Shown piece by piece: positions 17,346 through 27,463 of a stretch of DNA of 64,000 bases. The stretch is taken from NCBI RefSeq assembly GCF_000150275.1, contig NW_002060945.1, forward strand, positions 1,065,872 to 1,129,871, in the 5' to 3' direction. Origin of the DNA: Trichoplax adhaerens (taxonomy: Eukaryota > Animalia > Placozoa). Each line of letters starts with the position of its first letter. The stretch's first letter is position 1. The translations under genes and the position numbers were made by a program. The notes beneath the pieces were generated by a model that searched no databases, was not told the origin of the DNA, and saw only the letters and a program-made list of their open reading frames with translations.

Positions 17346-17737
17346 CCTGAATAAATTCTACTTTACGTCTTGTGTTACTTATTTCCTCGGAAATATTACT
17401 TTGCCAAGTAGGTAAATTGCACTAGCATCAAGATTGCAAAAGATAGGCAGATGGTATGAGTGTCTTCTAGACTAAGGATGGCAGTTATCTATTTTCACTC
17501 CAGATATTCATAGTATAGTACAGTATGGAGGATGTTGCCTGTTAGAGTACTTCTAGTAACTCCATATAGCCACTCACTAGCAGGATGTATAATACTATAC
17601 TGTTCGATAACACAGTACATGTGTTATACCGTATCCTATAATTGAGCCTTTTCTACTGACATTGTACAGTACAGTAGTGCACAAGGTGGAGCTGAAGATG
17701 TCCCATCGTCAGGATTACCTGTTGTAAACAACGATTG
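17346..17737. promoter_or_regulatory. Putative bidirectional promoter, C9orf85-like / SHLD2-like
   Basis: 392 nt separate the divergent ATGs; contains 'tagtacagtat', 'acagtacat' and 'tgtacagtacagtag'. Confidence 0.65.
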
Positions 17738-20700
17738 ATGGAGGAAATACCAACTATTCTCATCTTCTGTAACCCTCCATCGATTAATAATAAGCATTTA
17801 TCCCATCAGACTGACCACCAAAGTAAAAAGAGAAAGTTAAATCCAGCGAGCATTCAATGGAGAAGGAAATTATATCGCCATCCGTGCAAACCAATGCAAC
17901 CATCGACGAGTGCTTGTCAACATGATGATAAAGATCGAAGCAGCAATAATAGTGGCCCGTCTACATTTGAATATATTAATACTGTTATAGATCATGGCAG
18001 CAATTTACAAAAGGAATTTGATCGATTGATGAGAGATAGCCAAGCGATAATGCCTGGTATTAGTAGTCAATCTGGCTTTCAAGATACCGATCAGATCCTA
18101 TGTAGTGATAGTAATAGTCACGATTTCGACTACCATACTAGCTGGAATGACAGCCTTCCCATCGACAATTTCAACTCAATACCAGATAGTTGCGAAATAG
18201 AAGAGTTTACCAGTAGCACTTATAGTAGTTGTGATAGTGTCAAGACTTGCGATAGTATCTCATCAGATGATCATTGTAATGAAAATCAGCTATTGGCAAA
18301 CAAAACAGAAAATCCGATCGCTAGTGATCAAGCTGCAGAGACCTCATCAGGTAATTCTAGAGGTACACACGTACGCTGCATCAGGACAGCTACAGTTGTC
18401 TATTTTCATCTATCAAATACGATCCAGGCCATTGCTTCATCATACAATGATAAAACGAGATTTGCATAGTCACATTTTGCTTACTCTGCAGTATACGCGT
18501 ACACATACTACCATTATCAATCTACTCTACCAAAATGCTATACATAGCAATCCGATAGCCTCCTTTGTAATGTATTTCTATCTACAAGTCAGATGGATCA
18601 TATTACAAACAAGTTCTTGCCCACAAGATGTACAAAATAAATATCAATCTAATTAACTAAGCTCGCAATTCTTCATGCAGTTTCACTATCTAAGAAGTAT
18701 CTTCAAGCATTGCAGTATATAACTGATAGCTCACGCGCATGTATTCATATGTTTTGGTGATAGATAAGCTTCACCAACCGACAAGAAATCAAGATTCGCA
18801 AGAACTTTTACCTAATTTCAAGGTATGAAATTTTAATCAAATTAAAAGCAAGAATGTAACACTAGCACAATACTGTAAATGTTGATTTGAAGTAGTAACT
18901 ACTACATCAAGTTAAAAATTGTAATAAAATCTTAGAATGTATTATTCAATTTCACACTATTACTTTACCTTATATTCAATCGTGCAGTATTGTATATTAT
19001 CAACCCATGTATATCTTTATAGTATATGTTATACGGTATTACTATTAGGGTGTGCTTCTTTCATATAGTAACAAAAGACAACGATTATTTATATACTTCC
19101 TATATCACTTCTAAATCTATCTAAATTTCTCCTGCAGATTTCCAAGATTGCCAATTGTACCCAAAAGTCTCAATTAGTCAATTTACTGGTAGTAGCACTT
19201 CAAGGTGATTGAACAATTAATGTAATTAACCTCAAGTAACATGAAACTTTCTTCTTTCTAGTATAAAAACAAATTACTTTAATAAATACCTTATTTGCAA
19301 TCCTTTAATTGTCAAATTTTAGTGAATCCAGCTCACGAAATTCAAACTAAATCAGGCAAAAATGTAAGTTTAAGCAATACACCAAGCTTGCTTTTACAGT
19401 TAATGTATTAGCTACATAAATAAAATGCTAATTTTAGGCAGGACAGATGATTTTAATTGGATCTATGCTAGTTGGTGACCCAACTCAGAGTTATTTTAAG
19501 GTGAAAAAATAATGCCGTTAATGCAATATAGCAATTATAATAACTATGACTGCTAAGATTCAAACTTCCTAGGCTTCTTTCTACACTTAGATTACACTCT
19601 GGAGACAAAATACTGCATGGCTTGAAAGGATAAGCCTCGGAGATATTCTATTACTTGCAGGTTTAGGATCATATTTCATATCGTAGATGGATAATAAAAA
19701 CTTTATGTCAAAATCTATTTTTTTCGAACCTTTTGTGATTATAAATACGAGAAAAAAATAACAGTCGTCTATACTTGCAATTAATACGGATATCTTTTAC
19801 ATATCCTCACTTGATGTAATACTTCAACCCCTAGATTTAGAAGTCGACGAGTGGCGTGGAAAATATTTTGCTCAAAGTATTCATTCTTCCTGGGTAGTTA
19901 ACCTTCATAAATGTAGAGATATAACTGGTAAAAGAGGTTAGCTATCAATTTCTCTAATATAAATATTATAAGCTAAAATATCAGTGCTCTTCAGGATAGT
20001 ACAAACCATTTTTAATACAAATCCTCATATATATCGTAAATTCCTTTTTCCAATACTTAGTTAGACATTATATTCCATCAAAAACCATGGATGATGTTTA
20101 CACATGGGCATCGAATTACTTGCCACATATATATAATACAAATGATCAATCAACCTTGCAAGTACAAAGCAAAGGTAATTCACCCTCGTCACTATAGCTA
20201 TATATGTGTTTCATCTAGTAATTCTAGTAATATCGTCTACCTGATGTTTTGATATTCAAGGAGAGGTTCAATTTGTTACTTACAAGAGCTTAACTCAGGA
20301 CGTTGTAGTTCATTTCAAGGCCAAGTTGCTATCGATCAAATGCTATACTAGTAAATAAATAAAAGCACTATTTCTACACGTAATGTAAAAATTAACTCGC
20401 TCTTTCTTACCAGTTGTTTTATCTTGTATTAATAATGCACTCTAGTTGGAAATGTTACCTATCAGTATGAAACTAAGCGCCTCCCAAAAATGGTTGCTAG
20501 TAAGTTGAAAATAGTAATAACAGTTCAAATTTTAATTTCGCTCATATTTTCATTCTCTATTTTAGCATTAGCGGAATCATCTGTACAAAAAATTAAACTA
20601 CAACTGTAAGTGAACGATCTTAAGAAATGTTTATGGTGAATATAAATATATCACTTCATATATAACTGTATTGCAGTTGGGGCAGACAGGCTAGATGGTT

Positions 20701-22620
20701 CTCAGAATTAAGAGCTAATATCAATCGAGTTTGGAAGTGGTCCTTTCTACATGTTCACTATGATGAGGTTACAGGTAAACCCTCCGTAGACTATTACTTT
20801 AGGATACAATTTTGCGTATGATCATATGAACTGGAGGTTTTAAACTGCTGTTGATTATATTACCATTCTTACCATCTTATGTATCCCTTAACTAGATAAC
20901 TACGTACTTAATACAACTCCAATATCTGAAAAATCTTTATTAGATGATAAGTCTTCCGAAGCAGTAGATATTAATCGAGTATGTTTCGTTGACCATATTA
21001 CAAATTTACTATTACCAGTCTAATTTATTTCTTTAATATCTGTTTTAGAAATGTGATAATTACGGGCTGGAATTACAGAGCATTAAACAAATGTTATCAA
21101 TATCACTACAATGTACAATAAAACATTGATATATGTTAATTTATTACGCTTGCTATTTTTTTGAGAAATTTTTTTATGATAATATATCAAATTCTACATG
21201 ACTACATGCATTCATTCCATCTATCCGTTTATTTTATGATGCAGCTGTCATTATTTTATCTGCTAATATCAAACTACTCAGGTAATAATATTGTCATTAT
21301 TTAAATAAATATGAGTACTAGCTTACGTTGTATTCTATATATGTTCGCTATAACCTAACTTTATTGTGAATTAATATCGCAGGTTTCAAAATAAAAGTGG
21401 AAGATATCGTAATATTTCACTCGAAACAAAAGCTTCGTATGAAGACTTGGTATACGCACTTATAGATTAATAAATTAATCTGCAACTATTTCTCGTTTCC
21501 CCTCCTAATCCATACTAAACTCGTCATTAGAGTAAGCAAATGGCAAACTTCACTTACGTGGGATGTTCACTATGCTCGAAAATGCTACCACAAGTAATGC
21601 TTCAGGAGGGATAATCTTTTTTAATTAAATTATAATTATCAAGGCGATGTATTACATTACTGCCAATTTCAAATATACTTTCTTTAGGATAAGAATGAAG
21701 TATATAAACAATGTACGCAATGTATCCGTGAAGAGCAGGGTATACAATAAACTAATTTATTAATAATATATTAAGCTACTCCTGTAATATTAAATGTTTC
21801 TATAATAATCATTATATTTATAGCCTTTATCCCTGCAACCATAACTCGGTGCTACCGGTAACGCTAACTTGCACTAAATTATTGATTTGCGTTTTAACAA
21901 TTATCTCTTCATAAACTATATCCAATACTGCATTAGCATACATTTAAAAGTAATATCAGTAGTGCATTGTATATTTAATTTTTATATTTTTATTTAATAA
22001 TTGTCCTAGAGATTTATTGTAATCATAATATACGTAATTCTTTGTTTGATCCATATATCTAGGCCGATAACTATAGTCTTAACAGACGGCCAACAAGATG
22101 TTAGTATAACGGCATCAAATGAAGCAATCGTCAAGGTAAAAAATGTAAAATCATTTCTTTATAACAAAAGAGTTCAATCGCGTTTAGTACCATTACATCA
22201 GTGTATGTTATATAAATTTATCCTATCTTTATAATAATTTTATTCCGAAAATTTAGTTATTCTTGAATGTCCCAGCAAATTCCTTAACCAAACGGCTTCA
22301 TCCGGAATCAAATATAACGGTATGGCTATAGTAATTTTATATTATGATGTACGAGTATACAATCGTATTTGCGGTTAAATAATATAAACTTCGTACCTTA
22401 CTATGTAAAGATTAAAAAGTTATAATTTTGCTTATGTAACGCCTTTTAATTACATAATCTTATACACTTTTAGTATGCAGAGGTAATTGCTGATCTTTGT
22501 CGACATATGGTGAAATCATGCAACTCGATGAAATTTCGCATTAATTGCACTGTTACTCAAGATGATAATGGCTTTATAGTTTCACGGCGATACGAACTAC
22601 ATGACGTTATATCACATTAG
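17738..22620 (+). CDS. SHLD2: Shieldin complex subunit 2 (FAM35A/RINN2) homolog: N-terminal motif, disordered linker, three OB folds with CXXC..CXXC zinc site; ~22 exons
   Basis: Exon 1 at 17738-18350, then 18764-18822, 19138-19204, 19323-19363, 19438-19500, 19591-19660 and onward to TAG at 22618-22620, all phase-consistent GT-AG. Translation includes LVNLLVVALQVNPAHEIQTKSGKNAGQMILIGSMLVGD, ITLWRQNTAWLERISLGDILLL, QLWGRQARW, YVLNTTP, YVGCSLC...DKNEVYKQCTQC, YRPITIVLTDG, LNVPANSL, ITYAEVIADL and DDNGF. These are colinear with the recalled human SHLD2 (EINIKFGPNSG, FLWR..LGDIILL, LWGPGAAW, LHTTP, YTGCAKC..DENRIYKQCFSC, YRPALMTAIDG, ITYGMVVADL, DENSY). Confidence 0.88.
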
Positions 22621-22851
22621 TAACTTTATAATTCTTAATGTAACTAGCAATAACTAACATATACATTTAATAGTATAATGAATCCGAGTACTTAACCATC
22701 TATTACTGAAATTATTATAATGTTATACACTGTATAAACGATATTCAACAGTATGCAAATCAAAATATATATACAAGAGTCTCATTATTAAAATGCGACT
22801 AAATTTCGTGTATAGTAACCAAATTATTTTGTATATAGTAACCAAAGTAAT

Positions 22852-25800
22852 TTACAATGCTTTCGATCCAATGGCTAGAATATATAAGCAATAAAAAATT
22901 CATTAGCTAGTGATTCTAATATAACTGGTAGTAGAGATTTTGCAATTTATAGTACCTTTCACATGGCAAACATCAACATCAATTCCCCAGTTAACAATTC
23001 TATCAATCCAGAGTATTTGCTTGGTTGAAAGACGATCGTTCGGCCCTTTTACTTCCGCAAACTAATCACGAAAATAGTAACGTGACTATCACCCCATTGA
23101 AAGTGCCTAAAAAGTAAAAGTACTTACTTTAACTTTTTTCGTCTCTTTATTCCATAAAACTAAATCTGGAAGGCCACCTGCTGCAAAGCTCTTAGAAAAA
23201 CGCTCACATAGATCCGCCAAAATTTCACCACCAAAACATAACGCTAAACTCTACGAATAGTAGTATTTACTTACTATCGGTTTACAATATTAACTAAATT
23301 ATGGCAATGTTACTGAAGTTAATATTACTATTATGTGTTTATATTCACCTGAACTTGGGGTAAACCATTGGGAAATCGTTCCCAGTTAATGCCTACACAT
23401 ATTCTGCCTTCATATCTTGTCCAAGTACTCTTAATCATGTCCTCAATACCCTATAAATAATTATTAACAGTGAATGCGCTTTCAATTTTCGTTAATCAAT
23501 ATTTATAATCCTATCGAGCTATCTTACCTGATCATCACTTTCTCTTATTAGTCGTAGCTTTTCTTCAATTATATCCTTACGGTTCGAATAAAATCCTCCA
23601 TGCATCAAATCCAAAGGAGCACTCTATAAATGATTATAAACTGGTATTTATTATATCACAACTACCTCTTTAATATTAATATTAATCATACGTGAATTCT
23701 AGCAGTTCCCACAAATACCTGAAATGGATGTCGAAAAACATCTGGCACGCCTGGAGTAAATAAAATATCCCACATGAGCAACGTGTATAGCGTTGATAAT
23801 GTCGCACCCTCTGCATGCAAACCATCTGTAAATCCTTCATTATCTAAGTAATGGTATAAAGCCAATTCCTCAACGGAACAAAGAAAGCTGCAATCTTCAC
23901 CAGGGCGAATAAATACGGATTTATAACCAGACCCTACTGCCGGGTAAAGACGACCAGTTATTGTAATCTGGAAAGTGAGAGAACAGAATTTAATTATTAT
24001 GGTAAACATTGGTAGGATAAGTTAATGGCCACATTTCAAGATAAGTAATGCATTTTACTGATAATATATAAATCGCACATGATTCGCATCTTTCAAGTTG
24101 ATTTGAGGAATGTCTTGTCTATATATATGAAGTTTCTTATTACTTGGTGAATTACAAAGTCTAATTCCACGTTGTTGAAGAGCTAGTTTACGTCCTCCTC
24201 CAATACATGGATCTACAAGAGCTTCTTTGACGGCATTAAGGCTCTGAGATAAAAGGATTCAGAGCAAAAATTTGTGAAAAGATTTAACTACTATTCCGTT
24301 ACAAGGTTTATTATAAATATGAAATCTAACGAATCTGCTGCATTACATACAAGTTCTGGCTGCTTCAAATGTTGTTCTAGAATTAGAGCTAATCGATCCC
24401 ACCATTTTCCACGTCGTACGTTACAGAATACTTTCTGTTGTAACAAATATTGCAATTCCATGGAAGCTTCCTTGTACATTCGTTTTTTTTCTAATAATCC
24501 AATACCCGACGATAAAATCTGGCAGCAAACCCATCCAGGGGTGTATTGCATAAGATAACTTGGCAGCTGCCTCCCAATAAAATTCTCATCATTGAGCAAG
24601 TCATTGATAATAGACTTGCAATCATCATAAACATCATGATACAACTGTAACGCCGTATCGACATCTCCTCTAGCAAATGCTTCATTAATATCATAGTACT
24701 CTTGTAGCTTGCTATCATATCTAATGAAAATACAAGACATCTTTAGAAAATATACAGAAAGACTTAATAATCGATATTATGAATGATATTGACTCGCAGG
24801 TCCCTTACGTGATAAAATCTTCACGGCATGTAAATACTGGCGTAGGTCGATATATTTCATATTCAGGGTATACAAGCCTACCAAAATTTACCATCATCAG
24901 TTGCGCCCTATAATGTTGACAAAAGACCATAAAATTAATACTGATACTATTGACCCATATCAGTATTACGTACTACCTTATTTAAATTACTTACATTTGA
25001 GCATGTCCTCCATTAGCTAAGTCATCGTCATATGTCGCCGACGTAAGAGCAAACAATAACGACATACGATTAAAAACACATCGAGGATGCTTCTGTAATC
25101 GGATGCACAATCCCAAAACCGATTTCGCTCTACCATTACAAAATGGAAATGTTAATAACTCATGTATTCAGTTGCAATGCAGGATTATACCTAAAATAGG
25201 AATGCACTGGTAGAAGCATTACCGTTTTATAACACTCCGTGTGATTCCTGATACTCCTTCCACTTGTTGTCCATATACACCCCTTTGTTGACGACCAAGC
25301 TTTTTTAAAGCCTCAATAATATTATTTTTCGATCCAGACTTAACATGGTACATTTTAGCTAACTTTTTTACTTCTGGGCCAGGTAATAAATTTAAGATAT
25401 CTTCCATATCGGTCAAGGAGTCGTCTAATTGCAAGAAAATCATTAAATATCAAATTTTATTGCTACAGACTAACGAATTCCTTAGAATTAGTACCTACGC
25501 AAGAACGGTTGATGCAATTTTTGTTTAAGATCATAAATTCTGTGCACTAATTCTATACCCTTTAATGTTTAATTTTGTATTGATAACGCATATCTAGTTT
25601 AAAGCTAACAGACTGATAGTATAATAACAAAGCTTATTTTTATGTTAATTAGTCCATAAAATAGCAAAATGAATCCATTAAAAATTTATAGTAGGTAAAA
25701 TAGTTTGTATGCACGTACTACAAATCATCATTATAAAATTTATTTTACATACCATCTTCCACTAAACCAGCATTCCTCAATTGCTCGATGTCACTACTAA

Positions 25801-27412
25801 GATCTTCCCTGATGTCGGGATATTTCAACTTACTGCATTGGAACCAAGTGTATACGCGTAAAAATAAACGCACGTATAACTTTTGAGCAGAAACTATAAA
25901 TCAATTGAAGGACAAGACATGTACGTGCTTGTTAGTAACAAAGGGATGGACTAAATTCGTGATTGAGCAAAGTTCTTATAAATTTTATTTAAATTGCTAT
26001 TTGAAAATACCCGATAAATTGTAAAAGCTGTCTACAGCAACTAAATCTTCATCATTAAAAAGGCAAACATCGTCTTTACAGTTTCGTACTGTCTGGATTA
26101 TAATGTTAAAGTTACTTAAGTAATACGGCAGGTAAGGCTCTTTTTGAGACGTTTGATGGGTTTGATCATCGTTTTGTGGAATACCAGCTGGTGCTGAAAC
26201 AGGTGTAAGTTCTTCCGATTTTTCTACTTTTACCATTGATTGCGGCCCTACATCGATTTTCTCCTGACTTGCAATTACTACAGCCGTTGACGGGCTTGCA
26301 CTCTGTATAGAGGATGCAATCTCATTTGTAGATGGCTTTATTACAGTAGGATTAGTTGAAGTATGACATTCGTCTTGTGCTAATACCTGACAATCTGATT
26401 GTTGTATTTTATTCTCCTCCAAGCATACCTGGTTATTTTGACGAGGGCTACTGTTAGACATATCGCTTTGATTACTATATTTTACCTTAGGCTTCATATT
26501 CTCTTCCCGAATCGTATTAGTTCTACCACCTCTACCTTTAATGTCAACACCCTTATGGTTAGCTTTATCTTTAGTAATAACAGATCTACTTGAATCGACT
26601 GTTAACGATGGACTTGTGTTCTGTATAGTTGATGTAATCTCATTCGTAGGCGGTGTTATCACGATAGAGCTAGTAGAAGTATGATGATCGTCTTGTACTA
26701 ATACCTGGCAATCTAACTGTTGCGTTTTATCCTCCTCTAAGGATGTTGTGCTGTCTTGCAACAGGGTTTTATTAGCCATATCGTCATGATTACTGTGTTT
26801 ACCCTTATATGTTGCTTTAGTCCTATCATCTTTACCTTTAGCGTTAGTAACGCGACGAGTAATTTTGCTTTTAGCACTAATAGATCTCCTCGAATCAATT
26901 GTTGATGACGGACTTGTACATTCCATAAGTGATAAATTCTCCATTCTCGATGATCTCGTCACCATAAGATCAGTAGAAGTATGACATTTGTCTTTTGCTA
27001 ACTCCTGATAATCGAATCGCTGTGTGTTATCCTTCTGCAAGCATGCTTGGCTACTCTCACAATTAGCTCCATTATCCTGATCGTTATGTTTTAACTTATT
27101 CTCTTTCAAAATCGCTTTTGTTTTGTCATCTTTGCCTTGAATGTTAGTAGATCGATTTACAGCTTTACCTTTCCTATTGGCAGATACCACTGCACCATCA
27201 GTCAGCTGATGATTTTGATGTTTATCAAAATACTTGCTAATTTTAGCCTGTACACGACTTACAACCGATGCTTGAGCAGGTGAAGGATCTGCAGGTAAAT
27301 CTTCCTCTGTCAAGTCAATGACCACAACTGATTTATTACTTTCAGATTCTTCATATTTCCTCTTCCTTTCTTGTTTTAGTTTCAGGCTTAATCGAGTTGA
27401 AATTGCCGCCAT
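22852..27412 (-). CDS. FAN1: Fanconi-associated nuclease 1 (VRR-NUC), multi-exon
   Basis: Large exon 1 ends in PYYLSNF; later exons give QKLYVRLFLR, RRGKWWDRLAL, CSVEELALYHY..GLHAEG..LLMWDILF..PDVFRHPFQ and the catalytic GGLPDLVLW..FAEVKGPNDRLSTKQILWI..VCHVKAIGSKAL*. An alternative in-frame upstream ATG lies at 27463. Confidence 0.96.
26285..27160 (-). repeat. Three ~300-318 bp coding tandem repeats in FAN1 exon 1
   Basis: Protein units (KG)K/R-D/G-D/G-(K/R)T...Q..D.Q.L..D..HTST...SPS recur three times; the DNA anchor 'gaagtatga' is at ~26358, ~26676 and ~26976. Confidence 0.88.
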
Positions 27413-27463
27413 TGATTGCCAGGTTGATTGCCAAGTGCAGCCTTCGATTTGGTGCGCAGTCAT

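What the first reader, a model, noticed from the sequence alone, without database searches (positions are those of the whole stretch)
17738..22620. Intact shieldin subunit SHLD2 homolog in an apparently early-branching invertebrate genome
Seen: about 22 small phase-consistent exons, almost all absent from the ORF track, assemble into a protein with a short N-terminal motif, an acidic/Ser-rich linker and a C-terminal region colinear with the three OB folds of SHLD2. Both LW motifs (ITLWRQ, QLWGRQARW) and the CSLC...CTQC zinc site are present. Known: shieldin (SHLD1-2-3-REV7) is the ssDNA-binding effector of 53BP1-RIF1 end protection, and it has often been described as a vertebrate innovation tied to class-switch recombination. 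Inference: this gene points to an ancient SHLD2-based end-protection or fill-in module, possibly working with different or unrecognised partners.
Basis: partly seen in the sequence, partly recalled or inferred. Interest (0 to 1): 0.85.

Follow-up and report, generated by a model that had tools for sequence, protein, structure and literature searches.

The report
Placozoan SHLD2 gene, already catalogued
This is a real, transcribed 22-exon gene for the Trichoplax adhaerens counterpart of SHLD2, the DNA-binding subunit of the shieldin DNA-end-protection complex; it shows that SHLD2 is far older than vertebrates, but sequence databases already list it, so it is a correction to reviews and not a discovery.

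Summary
Window 17738-22620 (+) carries 22 GT-AG, phase-consistent exons encoding 697 aa. Spliced RNA contigs from three independent studies reproduce the introns, with one correction: exon 7 ends at 19936.

Taken exon by exon, the window hits Pfam SHLD2_OB1, OB_SHLD2_2nd and SHLD2_C in colinear order. The genome is Trichoplax adhaerens. Its annotated protein XP_002110287.1 / B3RR69 (601 aa, "uncharacterized") passes all three SHLD2 cut-offs (137.7, 28.0 and 38.3 bits), but it omits three transcribed exons, including half of the zinc ribbon and the last 48 residues.

The near-identical Trichoplax sp. H2 protein is already named "Protein FAM35A" in GenBank. It scores 137, 35 and 91 bits over the full domain lengths, against 30 bits for an RPA OB domain.

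F10 and P14 of the REV7-docking N-terminus are conserved. The same genome holds REV7, RIF1, CTC1 and TEN1. SHLD1, SHLD3, STN1 and 53BP1 were not found, but the method used is insensitive.

The novelty is low. Gao et al. 2018 noted FAM35A in "a few invertebrates", although Tomida et al. 2018 and later reviews call shieldin vertebrate-specific or young. Function is inferred, not shown.

The parts
17738..18350 (+). Exon 1 (residues 1-205). It holds the start codon, the N-terminal docking motif, a KKRK nuclear-localisation-like patch (17822-17845) and the Ser/Asp-rich region with blocks conserved among placozoans.
   Evidence: RNA contigs start at 17682 and 17709, and the joint 18350|18764 is seen in 3 runs. 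Comparison with a second placozoan-like contig gives dN/dS of about 0.24.
17738..17779 (+). N-terminal motif, residues 1-14. I9-F10 and P13-P14 sit at the same positions as human F10 and P14.
   Evidence: Sequence. Human F10 contacts open REV7 (PMC7181697). P14A/P17A abolishes REV7 binding (PMC6156606). The complex prediction gave only weak support.
18764..18822 (+). Exon 2
   Evidence: joints.
19138..19204 (+). Exon 3, the start of OB fold 1
   Evidence: Pfam SHLD2_OB1 positions 9-29, E 0.012; joints.
19323..19363 (+). Exon 4
   Evidence: joints.
19438..19500 (+). Exon 5
   Evidence: the X11 contig piece begins at 19438.
19591..19660 (+). Exon 6, OB1 with the first LW motif (19591-19608)
   Evidence: Pfam SHLD2_OB1 positions 65-86, E 2.1e-5, 24.7 bits. 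The Trp aligns with the TLW of crenarchaeal SSB.
19835..19936 (+). Exon 7, OB1. The donor was corrected to 19936 from RNA.
   Evidence: Pfam SHLD2_OB1 positions 92-119, E 7e-5. Joint 19936|20061 seen in 3 runs.
20061..20174 (+). Exon 8, the end of OB1
20261..20350 (+). Exon 9, the start of OB2. It is missing from the NCBI model XP_002110287.1.
   Evidence: RNA contig pieces 20258-20350 in X7 and X11; alignment.
20446..20499 (+). Exon 10
   Evidence: contig length arithmetic.
20566..20605 (+). Exon 11. It ends with the first residues of the second LW motif.
20677..20774 (+). Exon 12, OB2 with the second LW motif
   Evidence: Pfam OB_SHLD2_2nd positions 50-79, E 0.014; contig pieces.
20896..20978 (+). 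Exon 13
21049..21112 (+). Exon 14
21245..21281 (+). Exon 15, the start of the SHLD2_C (OB3) match
21383..21449 (+). Exon 16
21531..21593 (+). Exon 17, with the first CxxC of the zinc ribbon (21564-21575). It is missing from the NCBI model.
   Evidence: Joints 21449|21531 and 21593|21688 seen in 3 runs; alignment.
21688..21739 (+). Exon 18, with the second CxxC (21712-21723)
   Evidence: Pfam SHLD2_C positions 52-65, E 0.079; joints.
21824..21857 (+). Exon 19
22063..22135 (+). Exon 20
22257..22319 (+). Exon 21
22474..22620 (+). Exon 22, the last 48 residues plus the TAG stop. The NCBI model lacks it and reads into the intron instead.
   Evidence: Joint 22319|22474 seen in 3 runs. Alignment. SHLD2_C coverage reaches profile position 164 of 166 only when this exon is included.

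Best explanation
The locus is the single-copy, expressed Trichoplax adhaerens ortholog of SHLD2 (FAM35A), gene TRIADDRAFT_54129.

Shown here: a 697-aa product with four parts.
- A short N-terminal strand motif.
- A roughly 210-residue Ser/Asp-rich region, which contains a KKRK patch and blocks conserved among placozoans.
- The three SHLD2-type OB-fold domains.
- A CxxC...CxxC zinc ribbon in the last OB fold.

Inferred from human shieldin:
- The N-terminal strand (I9-F10 ... P14) docks onto the HORMA protein REV7, probably together with an adaptor that plays the part of SHLD3.
- The OB folds bind single-stranded DNA at resected ends.
- The complex limits resection and hands the end to CST-Pol alpha for fill-in, downstream of RIF1.

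Identity is about 0.95 certain. The mechanism in a placozoan is about 0.6.
For: - The exon model is intact and phase-consistent.
- Spliced RNA contigs from three studies match it.
- Window exons hit SHLD2_OB1 three times, at profile positions 9-29, 65-86 and 92-119. They also hit OB_SHLD2_2nd (50-79) and SHLD2_C (52-65). All hits are colinear.
- The annotated protein of this locus, P0001, scores 137.7, 28.0 and 38.3 bits against cut-offs of 26, 27 and 27.
- The 706-aa Trichoplax sp. H2 ortholog P0003 differs from the RNA-backed model by one 9-residue insert and four substitutions. It scores 137.2, 34.8 and 90.9 bits with near-full profile coverage, against 29.6 bits for REPA_OB_2.
- PF21669 finds only this locus in the 105.6-Mb genome.
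- The Atlas model of P0003 has the chordate SHLD2 cluster as its first structural neighbour, followed by RPA70-type three-OB proteins, at TM 0.44-0.57.
- OB1 aligns weakly to crenarchaeal SSB, including the TLW tryptophan.
- F10 and P14 sit where the human literature places the REV7-contact residues.
- REV7 is present as a 215-aa single-exon gene. It scores 247 bits to human MAD2B against about 50 bits to MAD2A. Y63 and L74 are kept, and V71, V148 and V150 are kept as Ile, Ile and Val.
- The complex prediction of SHLD2(1-60) with two REV7 copies was rated 'weak support'. The median score was 0.42 and the best of 3 controls 0.00. The runs agree in at least 41% of contacts and the partner pLDDT is at least 37. 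The tool's calibration for this mark is 51 of 78 solved complexes and 2 of 108 mismatched pairs, but at 0.60 or under only 5 of the 78 solved complexes reached it, against all 4 passing mismatches. The pass may come from memory of solved human complexes.
- RIF1_N, CTC1 and TEN1 are present in the genome.
- For exon 1 against a second placozoan-like sequence, dN is 0.33 and dS 1.37.
Against: - No biochemical or genetic data exist for any placozoan shieldin component.
- SHLD1_C, the 53BP1 Tudor domain and two STN1 models gave no hit. A scan for the FxPWFP motif of SHLD3 gave five hits, about what chance predicts, and none had a following PxxxpP. So the adaptor that human SHLD2 needs to reach REV7 is not identified.
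- These blanks are weak evidence. The same exon-wise method missed this very locus with PF15793.
- P17 of the human P14/P17 pair is not conserved.
- My AlphaFold2 model, made from a single sequence, was unusable (pLDDT 34). The three OB folds therefore rest on Pfam domain coverage and on the Atlas's own model.
- The complex score counts only as weak support.
Confidence: 0.78

Rival explanations
1. It is a true SHLD2-family protein, but in placozoans it works outside the 53BP1-RIF1 axis. It could be a REV7-linked or CST-linked ssDNA protector at replication forks or telomeres, or a simpler two-part SHLD2-REV7 unit without SHLD1 and SHLD3.
For: SHLD1_C, the 53BP1 Tudor domain and an SHLD3-type FxPWFP motif were not found, while REV7, CTC1 and TEN1 were. 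A 2026 paper title reports 53BP1-independent shieldin activity at replication-coupled breaks in mammals (PMC13457598, listed; I did not read it).
Against: The blanks come from an exon-wise six-frame search that also missed the true SHLD2_C locus, so absence is not shown. RIF1 is present. Human SHLD2 needs SHLD3 to lock onto REV7 (PMC7181697).
Confidence: 0.17
2. It is a generic RPA1-like or other OB-fold paralog (POT1, CTC1, MEIOB, SPIDR or RADX type) that only resembles SHLD2.
For: REPA_OB_2 also passes its cut-off on OB1 (31.1 and 29.6 bits). The Atlas feature search lists MEIOB, POT1, CTC1, SPIDR and CDC24/RPA clusters at 0.93-0.95, and its structure search lists RPA-type clusters at TM values similar to the SHLD2 cluster.
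Against: SHLD2_OB1 beats REPA_OB_2 by more than 100 bits. The two other SHLD2-specific domains also pass, in the right order and with full coverage, and no POT1, CTC1 or MEIOB family appears at E<=1. The N-terminus carries the SHLD2-type F10 and P14. GenBank's annotators reached the same name.
Confidence: 0.03
3. It is a decaying or non-coding locus, or an artefact of exon picking.
For: The official gene model is shorter (601 aa) and lacks three exons.
Against: The spliced form is seen in three studies with every junction as modelled. The frame is open across all 22 exons. The three omitted exons restore Pfam coverage. dN/dS is about 0.24.
Confidence: 0.02

Closest known systems
Human/vertebrate SHLD2 (FAM35A), the ssDNA-binding subunit of shieldin
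   Same: The order of parts is the same: a REV7-docking N-terminal strand with F10 and P14, a long disordered region, then three OB folds with a 4-Cys zinc ribbon in the last one. All three SHLD2 Pfam families pass their cut-offs.
   Different: It is shorter (697 aa; Tomida et al., give 904 aa for human isoform 1). P17 is not kept. It is so diverged that word-seeded searches found no protein outside Trichoplax. Its partners SHLD1 and SHLD3 are not identified in this genome.
Trichoplax sp. H2 'Protein FAM35A' (RDD45147.1, P0003)
   Same: It is essentially the same protein. All 22 exons are represented and only four substitutions are seen.
   Different: The H2 model carries a 9-residue insert before exon 3. 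T. adhaerens transcripts do not contain it: the joint 18822|19138 is direct in 3 runs.
RPA70 (RPA1) DNA-binding domains A, B and C, and archaeal RPA/SSB
   Same: It has tandem OB folds with a zinc ribbon in the C-terminal one, as Tomida et al. described for human FAM35A. It gives a weak REPA_OB_2 hit, shows SSB similarity around the TLW motif, and has structural neighbours among RPA proteins.
   Different: The HMM scores are far lower than for the SHLD2 families. It has no RPA70 N-terminal domain and carries a REV7-type N-terminus instead.

Membership tests
SHLD2 (FAM35A) | First OB fold matches Pfam SHLD2_OB1 (PF21669) above the gathering score | tested here: met
   137.7 bits on P0001 and 137.2 on P0003, cut-off 26. 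Window exons 3, 6 and 7 hit colinear profile segments.
SHLD2 (FAM35A) | Second OB fold matches OB_SHLD2_2nd (PF22779) | tested here: met
   34.8 bits over profile positions 2-81 of 82 on P0003, and 28.0 on the truncated P0001, cut-off 27. Exon 12 alone scores 15.8 bits. The margin over the cut-off is small.
SHLD2 (FAM35A) | C-terminal domain SHLD2_C (PF15793) with a CxxC...CxxC zinc ribbon | tested here: met
   90.9 bits over profile positions 2-164 of 166 on P0003. The four Cys lie at residues 566, 569, 584 and 587 of the window's model. Tomida et al. describe the conserved CxxC, CxxC.
SHLD2 (FAM35A) | N-terminal REV7/SHLD3-binding strand (human F10; P14/P17) | tested here: inconclusive
   F10 and P14 are present at the same positions, but P17 is not. 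Complex prediction with 2x REV7 gave weak support: 0.42 against a best control of 0.00, contact agreement at least 41%, partner pLDDT at least 37. The tool says such a low pass is more often wrong than right unless the guess was likely beforehand. There was no PDB sequence hit for the 30-residue N-terminus.
SHLD2 (FAM35A) | Better match to SHLD2 than to any other OB-fold family (reciprocal test) | tested here: met
   The only other family at E<=1 is REPA_OB_2, at 29.6-31.1 bits.
SHLD2 (FAM35A) | Binds ssDNA through the OB folds | not testable with these tools
   Indirect evidence only: the OB families above and the aligned Trp with archaeal SSB.
Shieldin complex (SHLD1-SHLD2-SHLD3-REV7) | REV7 present in the same genome | tested here: met
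   L005:1171-1815(-), 215 aa, 246.8 bits to human MAD2B against about 50 bits to MAD2A.
Shieldin complex (SHLD1-SHLD2-SHLD3-REV7) | SHLD1 and SHLD3 present in the same genome | tested here: inconclusive
   SHLD1_C gave no candidate. The FxPWFP pattern gave 5 hits against 3 for the control, none with a downstream PxxxpP. The method is insensitive to genes with tiny exons.
53BP1-RIF1-shieldin-CST pathway | Upstream and downstream factors present | tested here: inconclusive
   Found: RIF1_N at 31.2 bits, CTC1 at 47.5 and 30.2 bits, TEN1 at 120.7 bits. Not found: 53BP1 Tudor, Stn1 and STN1_2.

The most novel reading that the evidence does not exclude
Placozoans run a reduced 'proto-shieldin'. In it, SHLD2 is tethered to REV7 by its own N-terminus or by an unrecognised adaptor, and it protects or fills in ssDNA ends together with CTC1-TEN1, without SHLD1, SHLD3 or 53BP1. 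Shieldin would then date to the base of animals and would have nothing to do with antibody class switching in its origin.
Probability: 0.2. Interest if true: 0.6.

Novelty: already known. Interest (0 to 1): 0.3.

Why it matters
Reviews and primary papers often state or imply that shieldin is a young, vertebrate-linked addition to the 53BP1-RIF1 pathway tied to class-switch recombination. Tomida et al. say 'not in invertebrates or plants'. The THAP1 preprint says 'phylogenetically younger'. Another paper says SHLD1 'co-emerged with CSR'.

An expressed, constrained SHLD2 in a placozoan, beside REV7, RIF1, CTC1 and TEN1, shows that at least the DNA-binding subunit predates Bilateria. A very simple animal could therefore be used to ask what the ancestral job of SHLD2 was.

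The practical gain here is smaller. It is a corrected gene model for TRIADDRAFT_54129, which restores three exons, including half of the zinc ribbon. The databases already carry the family assignment.

Tried and rejected
- Search with PF15793 over the whole genome. It returned only two chance-level hits elsewhere and missed this locus. This shows that exon-wise family searches are insensitive here.
- Word-seeded protein searches, three in all, on residues 225-601 of P0001 and on 234-706 and 228-365 of P0003. They found only the two Trichoplax proteins. I therefore could not collect SHLD2 from other phyla, build a deep alignment, make a tree or map the phyletic range.
- The one exhaustive HMMER job, spent on exon 1. 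It returned the annotated protein and a 207-aa relative from one Logan contig.
- AlphaFold2 on P0003:234-706 without an alignment. The result was mean pLDDT 34 and pTM 0.20, which is unusable. No fold search was run on it.
- PDB sequence searches. No solved SHLD2 OB structure was found by sequence. The best hits were crenarchaeal SSB at E 0.06-0.1, and the N-terminal 30 residues hit nothing.
- Atlas feature search. It gave a non-discriminating mix of OB families.
- SHLD1_C, 53BP1 Tudor, Stn1 and STN1_2 searches. All gave no hits, which is no evidence of absence.
- FxPWFP pattern scan for SHLD3. It gave five hits against three for the control, none convincing.
- Supplement search of the Trichoplax sp. 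H2 genome paper for FAM35A and partner names. Nothing was found.
- Literature. No paper in the library joins SHLD2, FAM35A or shieldin with Trichoplax, Nematostella or placozoa. The Setiaputra & Durocher review and Dev et al. are not held.
- Complex prediction. It was rated weak support only and is not used as evidence of binding on its own.
Full report
**What is there**

Window 17738-22620 (+) lies in AT-rich sequence of about 32% GC. Six-frame reading shows a chain of short open segments bounded by AG and GT. Joining them in a local script gives 22 exons, all GT-AG and all phase-consistent, from the ATG at 17738 to the TAG at 22618-22620. Exon 1 is 613 nt and the rest are 34-147 nt. Introns are 66-413 nt, with a mean of 133.

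**Transcript support**

One run search found holders of this stretch in seven studies. I laid four runs from four studies on window 17500-22900.

- X7, X10 and X11 carry contigs with GT..AG joints at exactly the modelled introns. X11 is on record as RNA-Seq. Fifteen joints are listed.
- For the six joints not listed, the piece offsets of the 1,883-nt X7 contig match the summed exon lengths. For example, 94 nt lie between the pieces that end at 20350 and begin at 20677, which equals exons 10 + 11.
- X4 covers introns and shows no joints, so it behaves like DNA or unspliced RNA.
- The RNA corrected one choice of mine. Exon 7 ends at 19936, not at the alternative in-phase donor at 19927, so the product is 697 aa.
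- Contigs start at 17682 and 17709, so the 5' leader is at least 29-56 nt long.

**Which organism and which gene**

The genome is 105,631,681 bases in 1,414 contigs, and the window is C1412:1065872-1129871. An exhaustive HMMER search with exon 1 returned P0001. It is 100% identical over residues 1-204 and is listed as XP_002110287.1 / UniProt B3RR69, 'uncharacterized protein TRIADDRAFT_54129 [Trichoplax adhaerens]', 601 aa.

Aligned to the RNA-backed model, that annotation lacks exon 9, exon 17 (the first CxxC) and exon 22. It ends by reading three codons into intron 21. All three omitted exons are in the RNA contigs.

A word-seeded search then found P0003, RDD45147.1, 'Protein FAM35A [Trichoplax sp. 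H2]', 706 aa. It matches my model apart from four substitutions and a 9-residue insert before exon 3. T. adhaerens transcripts lack that insert.

**Is it SHLD2?**

Taken exon by exon, by reference, the window hits these Pfam families:

| Exon | Pfam family | Profile positions | E-value |
|---|---|---|---|
| 3 | SHLD2_OB1 | 9-29 | 0.012 |
| 6 | SHLD2_OB1 | 65-86 | 2.1e-5 |
| 7 | SHLD2_OB1 | 92-119 | 7e-5 |
| 12 | OB_SHLD2_2nd | 50-79 | 0.014 |
| 18 | SHLD2_C | 52-65 | 0.079 |

These are five colinear hits to the three SHLD2-specific families, with no competing family on those exons.

On whole database proteins the scores are decisive:

| Pfam family | Cut-off (bits) | P0001 (bits) | P0003 (bits) | P0003 profile coverage |
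|---|---|---|---|---|
| SHLD2_OB1 | 26 | 137.7 | 137.2 | 4-137 of 138 |
| OB_SHLD2_2nd | 27 | 28.0 | 34.8 | 2-81 of 82 |
| SHLD2_C | 27 | 38.3 | 90.9 | 2-164 of 166 |

The rise of SHLD2_C from 38 to 91 bits is the contribution of the exons the NCBI model dropped. PF21669 finds no second locus in the genome.

Supporting structural evidence:
- The Atlas's own model of P0003 has the chordate 'Shieldin complex subunit 2' cluster as its first structural neighbour (TM 0.48 over 323 residues). RPA70-type three-OB proteins follow at TM 0.44-0.57.
- The Atlas feature-based list is a non-discriminating mix of OB families.
- OB1 aligns weakly (E 0.06-0.1) to crenarchaeal SSB, including the Trp of its TLW motif. 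From memory, that Trp is a base-stacking residue in the Sulfolobus protein. I did not check this here.

**N-terminus and REV7**

The product begins with a 14-residue motif in which I9, F10, P13 and P14 stand out.
- In the human crystal structure, SHLD2 strand beta-1 pairs with open REV7 and SHLD3, and F10 packs against REV7 V71, L74, V148 and V150 (PMC7181697).
- The P14A/P17A mutation abolishes REV7 binding (PMC6156606).
- So F10 and P14 are kept at identical positions, and P17 is not.

A HORMA search found a single-exon 215-aa gene, L005:1171-1815(-). It scores 246.8 bits to human MAD2B/REV7 against about 50 bits to MAD2A. In that alignment Y63, L74, K44, K129, R124, A135 and W171 are kept, and V71, V148 and V150 appear as Ile, Ile and Val.

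The complex prediction of SHLD2(1-60) with two REV7 copies was rated 'weak support':
- The median score was 0.42 and the best of 3 controls 0.00.
- The runs agree in at least 41% of contacts, and the partner pLDDT is at least 37.
- The tool's calibration for this mark is 51 of 78 solved complexes and 2 of 108 mismatched pairs. At 0.60 or under, only 5 of the 78 solved complexes reached it, against all 4 passing mismatches.
- The pass may reflect memory of the solved human complexes.

I treat it as compatible with docking, not as evidence of it.

**The middle region is not mere filler**

A 207-aa ORF on a 1,139-nt Logan contig (P0002 / L011) is 54% identical to exon 1. It is presumably from another placozoan lineage. 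I infer that from the likeness alone, because the sample's organism was not shown. The contig retains the intron, so it is DNA or unspliced RNA.

The alignment shows conserved blocks at residues 1-14, about 31-50, about 76-110 and about 140-170. dN is 0.33 and dS is 1.37 (saturated), which gives a ratio of about 0.24, falling to about 0.15 in the central blocks. A KKRK patch at residues 30-33 looks like a nuclear localisation signal. That is inference.

**Partners in the same genome**

I used an exon-wise six-frame family search.
- Found: RIF1_N at C1412:143327-143932(-), 31.2 bits.
- Found: CTC1 at C1412:4637574-4643373(-), 47.5 and 30.2 bits.
- Found: TEN1 at C1414:6250550-6250894(+), 120.7 bits.
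- Found: REV7, as described above.
- Not found: SHLD1_C, the 53BP1 Tudor domain, Stn1 and STN1_2.

These blanks mean little, because the same method missed this locus with PF15793. A degenerate-pattern scan for the FxPWFP motif of SHLD3, taken from PMC7181697, gave five hits against three for the reversed control. None was followed by a PxxxpP motif.

**How it most likely works**

This part is inference from human shieldin.
- The N-terminal strand locks onto REV7, probably with an SHLD3-like adaptor that has not been recognised.
- The OB folds bind ssDNA at resected ends.
- The assembly limits resection and recruits CST-Pol alpha for fill-in, downstream of RIF1.

**Novelty**

The family assignment already exists.
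- GenBank has named the H2 protein FAM35A since the 2018 H2 genome (genome paper PMC6057997).
- The protein collection's precomputed Pfam column lists the three SHLD2 families for both Trichoplax proteins.
- Gao et al. [quoted passage not shown]

Other papers say otherwise.
- Tomida et al. 2018 stated that orthologs are 'not in invertebrates or plants'.
- Later papers call shieldin phylogenetically younger than 53BP1 and RIF1, and link it to class switching.
- No paper in the library joins SHLD2 or shieldin with Trichoplax or placozoans.

So this corrects a common statement and improves a gene model, but it is not a discovery.

**Limits and rules followed**

- The joined spliced model was assembled only inside local scripts, to check phases and to align it with P0001 and P0003. 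It was not sent to any search, folding or complex tool, because it has no reference. The window was searched exon by exon, and P0001 and P0003 stood in for the whole protein.
- The AlphaFold2 run on P0003:234-706 without an alignment failed (pLDDT 34). I could not fetch SHLD2 from other phyla.

Noticed in passing
window 17738-22620; NCBI XP_002110287.1 / UniProt B3RR69: The public T. adhaerens gene model (601 aa) omits three transcribed exons: 20261-20350, 21531-21593 (which holds the first CxxC of the zinc ribbon) and 22474-22620. It ends by reading into intron 21. The RNA-backed product is 697 aa.
   Followed up: yes
window 22875-27463, minus strand: The downstream neighbour is a FAN1 (Fanconi-associated nuclease 1) homolog, convergent with SHLD2. 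Pfam gives FAN1_TPR at 103 bits for 24294-24740(-) and Fan1_SAP at 35.7 bits for 25222-25443(-). RNA contigs join SHLD2's last exon and 3' UTR (22473-22876) to sequence from 22958 onward, across a gap that reads CT..AC on the + strand and so is a minus-strand intron. The two repair genes therefore seem to overlap tail to tail.
   Followed up: partly
window 17698-17727: A 9-codon upstream ORF lies in the 5' leader. It is included in the contig that starts at 17682 but not in the one that starts at 17709.
   Followed up: no
L005:1171-1815 (-) = G000:C1404, about 1226519-1227163: REV7/MAD2L2 is a single uninterrupted 215-codon frame, in a genome where SHLD2 has 22 exons. TEN1 likewise lies in one 155-aa open frame.
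   Followed up: partly
window 17738-18350 against L011:401-1021: The supposedly disordered N-terminal half has four blocks that are strongly conserved in a second placozoan-like sequence, at residues 1-14, about 31-50, about 76-110 and about 140-170. Their function is unknown, and they may be partner-binding motifs.
   Followed up: partly
P0003:225-233 (Trichoplax sp. H2); corresponds to window 19023-19049: The H2 annotation inserts 9 residues before exon 3. T. adhaerens transcripts splice 18822 directly to 19138 in three runs, so the insert is probably an annotation artefact or an H2-specific exon.
   Followed up: partly
P0003:234-706, Atlas feature search: The two nearest clusters by language-model features are unnamed plant (Streptophyta) proteins of about 400-420 aa, at 0.94-0.95. 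They may be uncharacterised plant three-OB proteins. Their relation to SHLD2 is untested.
   Followed up: no
G000:C1412:5246339-5246638 (+), L006: A second HORMA locus (30.7 bits) is split by introns. It is presumably MAD2 or another HORMA protein and was not examined.
   Followed up: no
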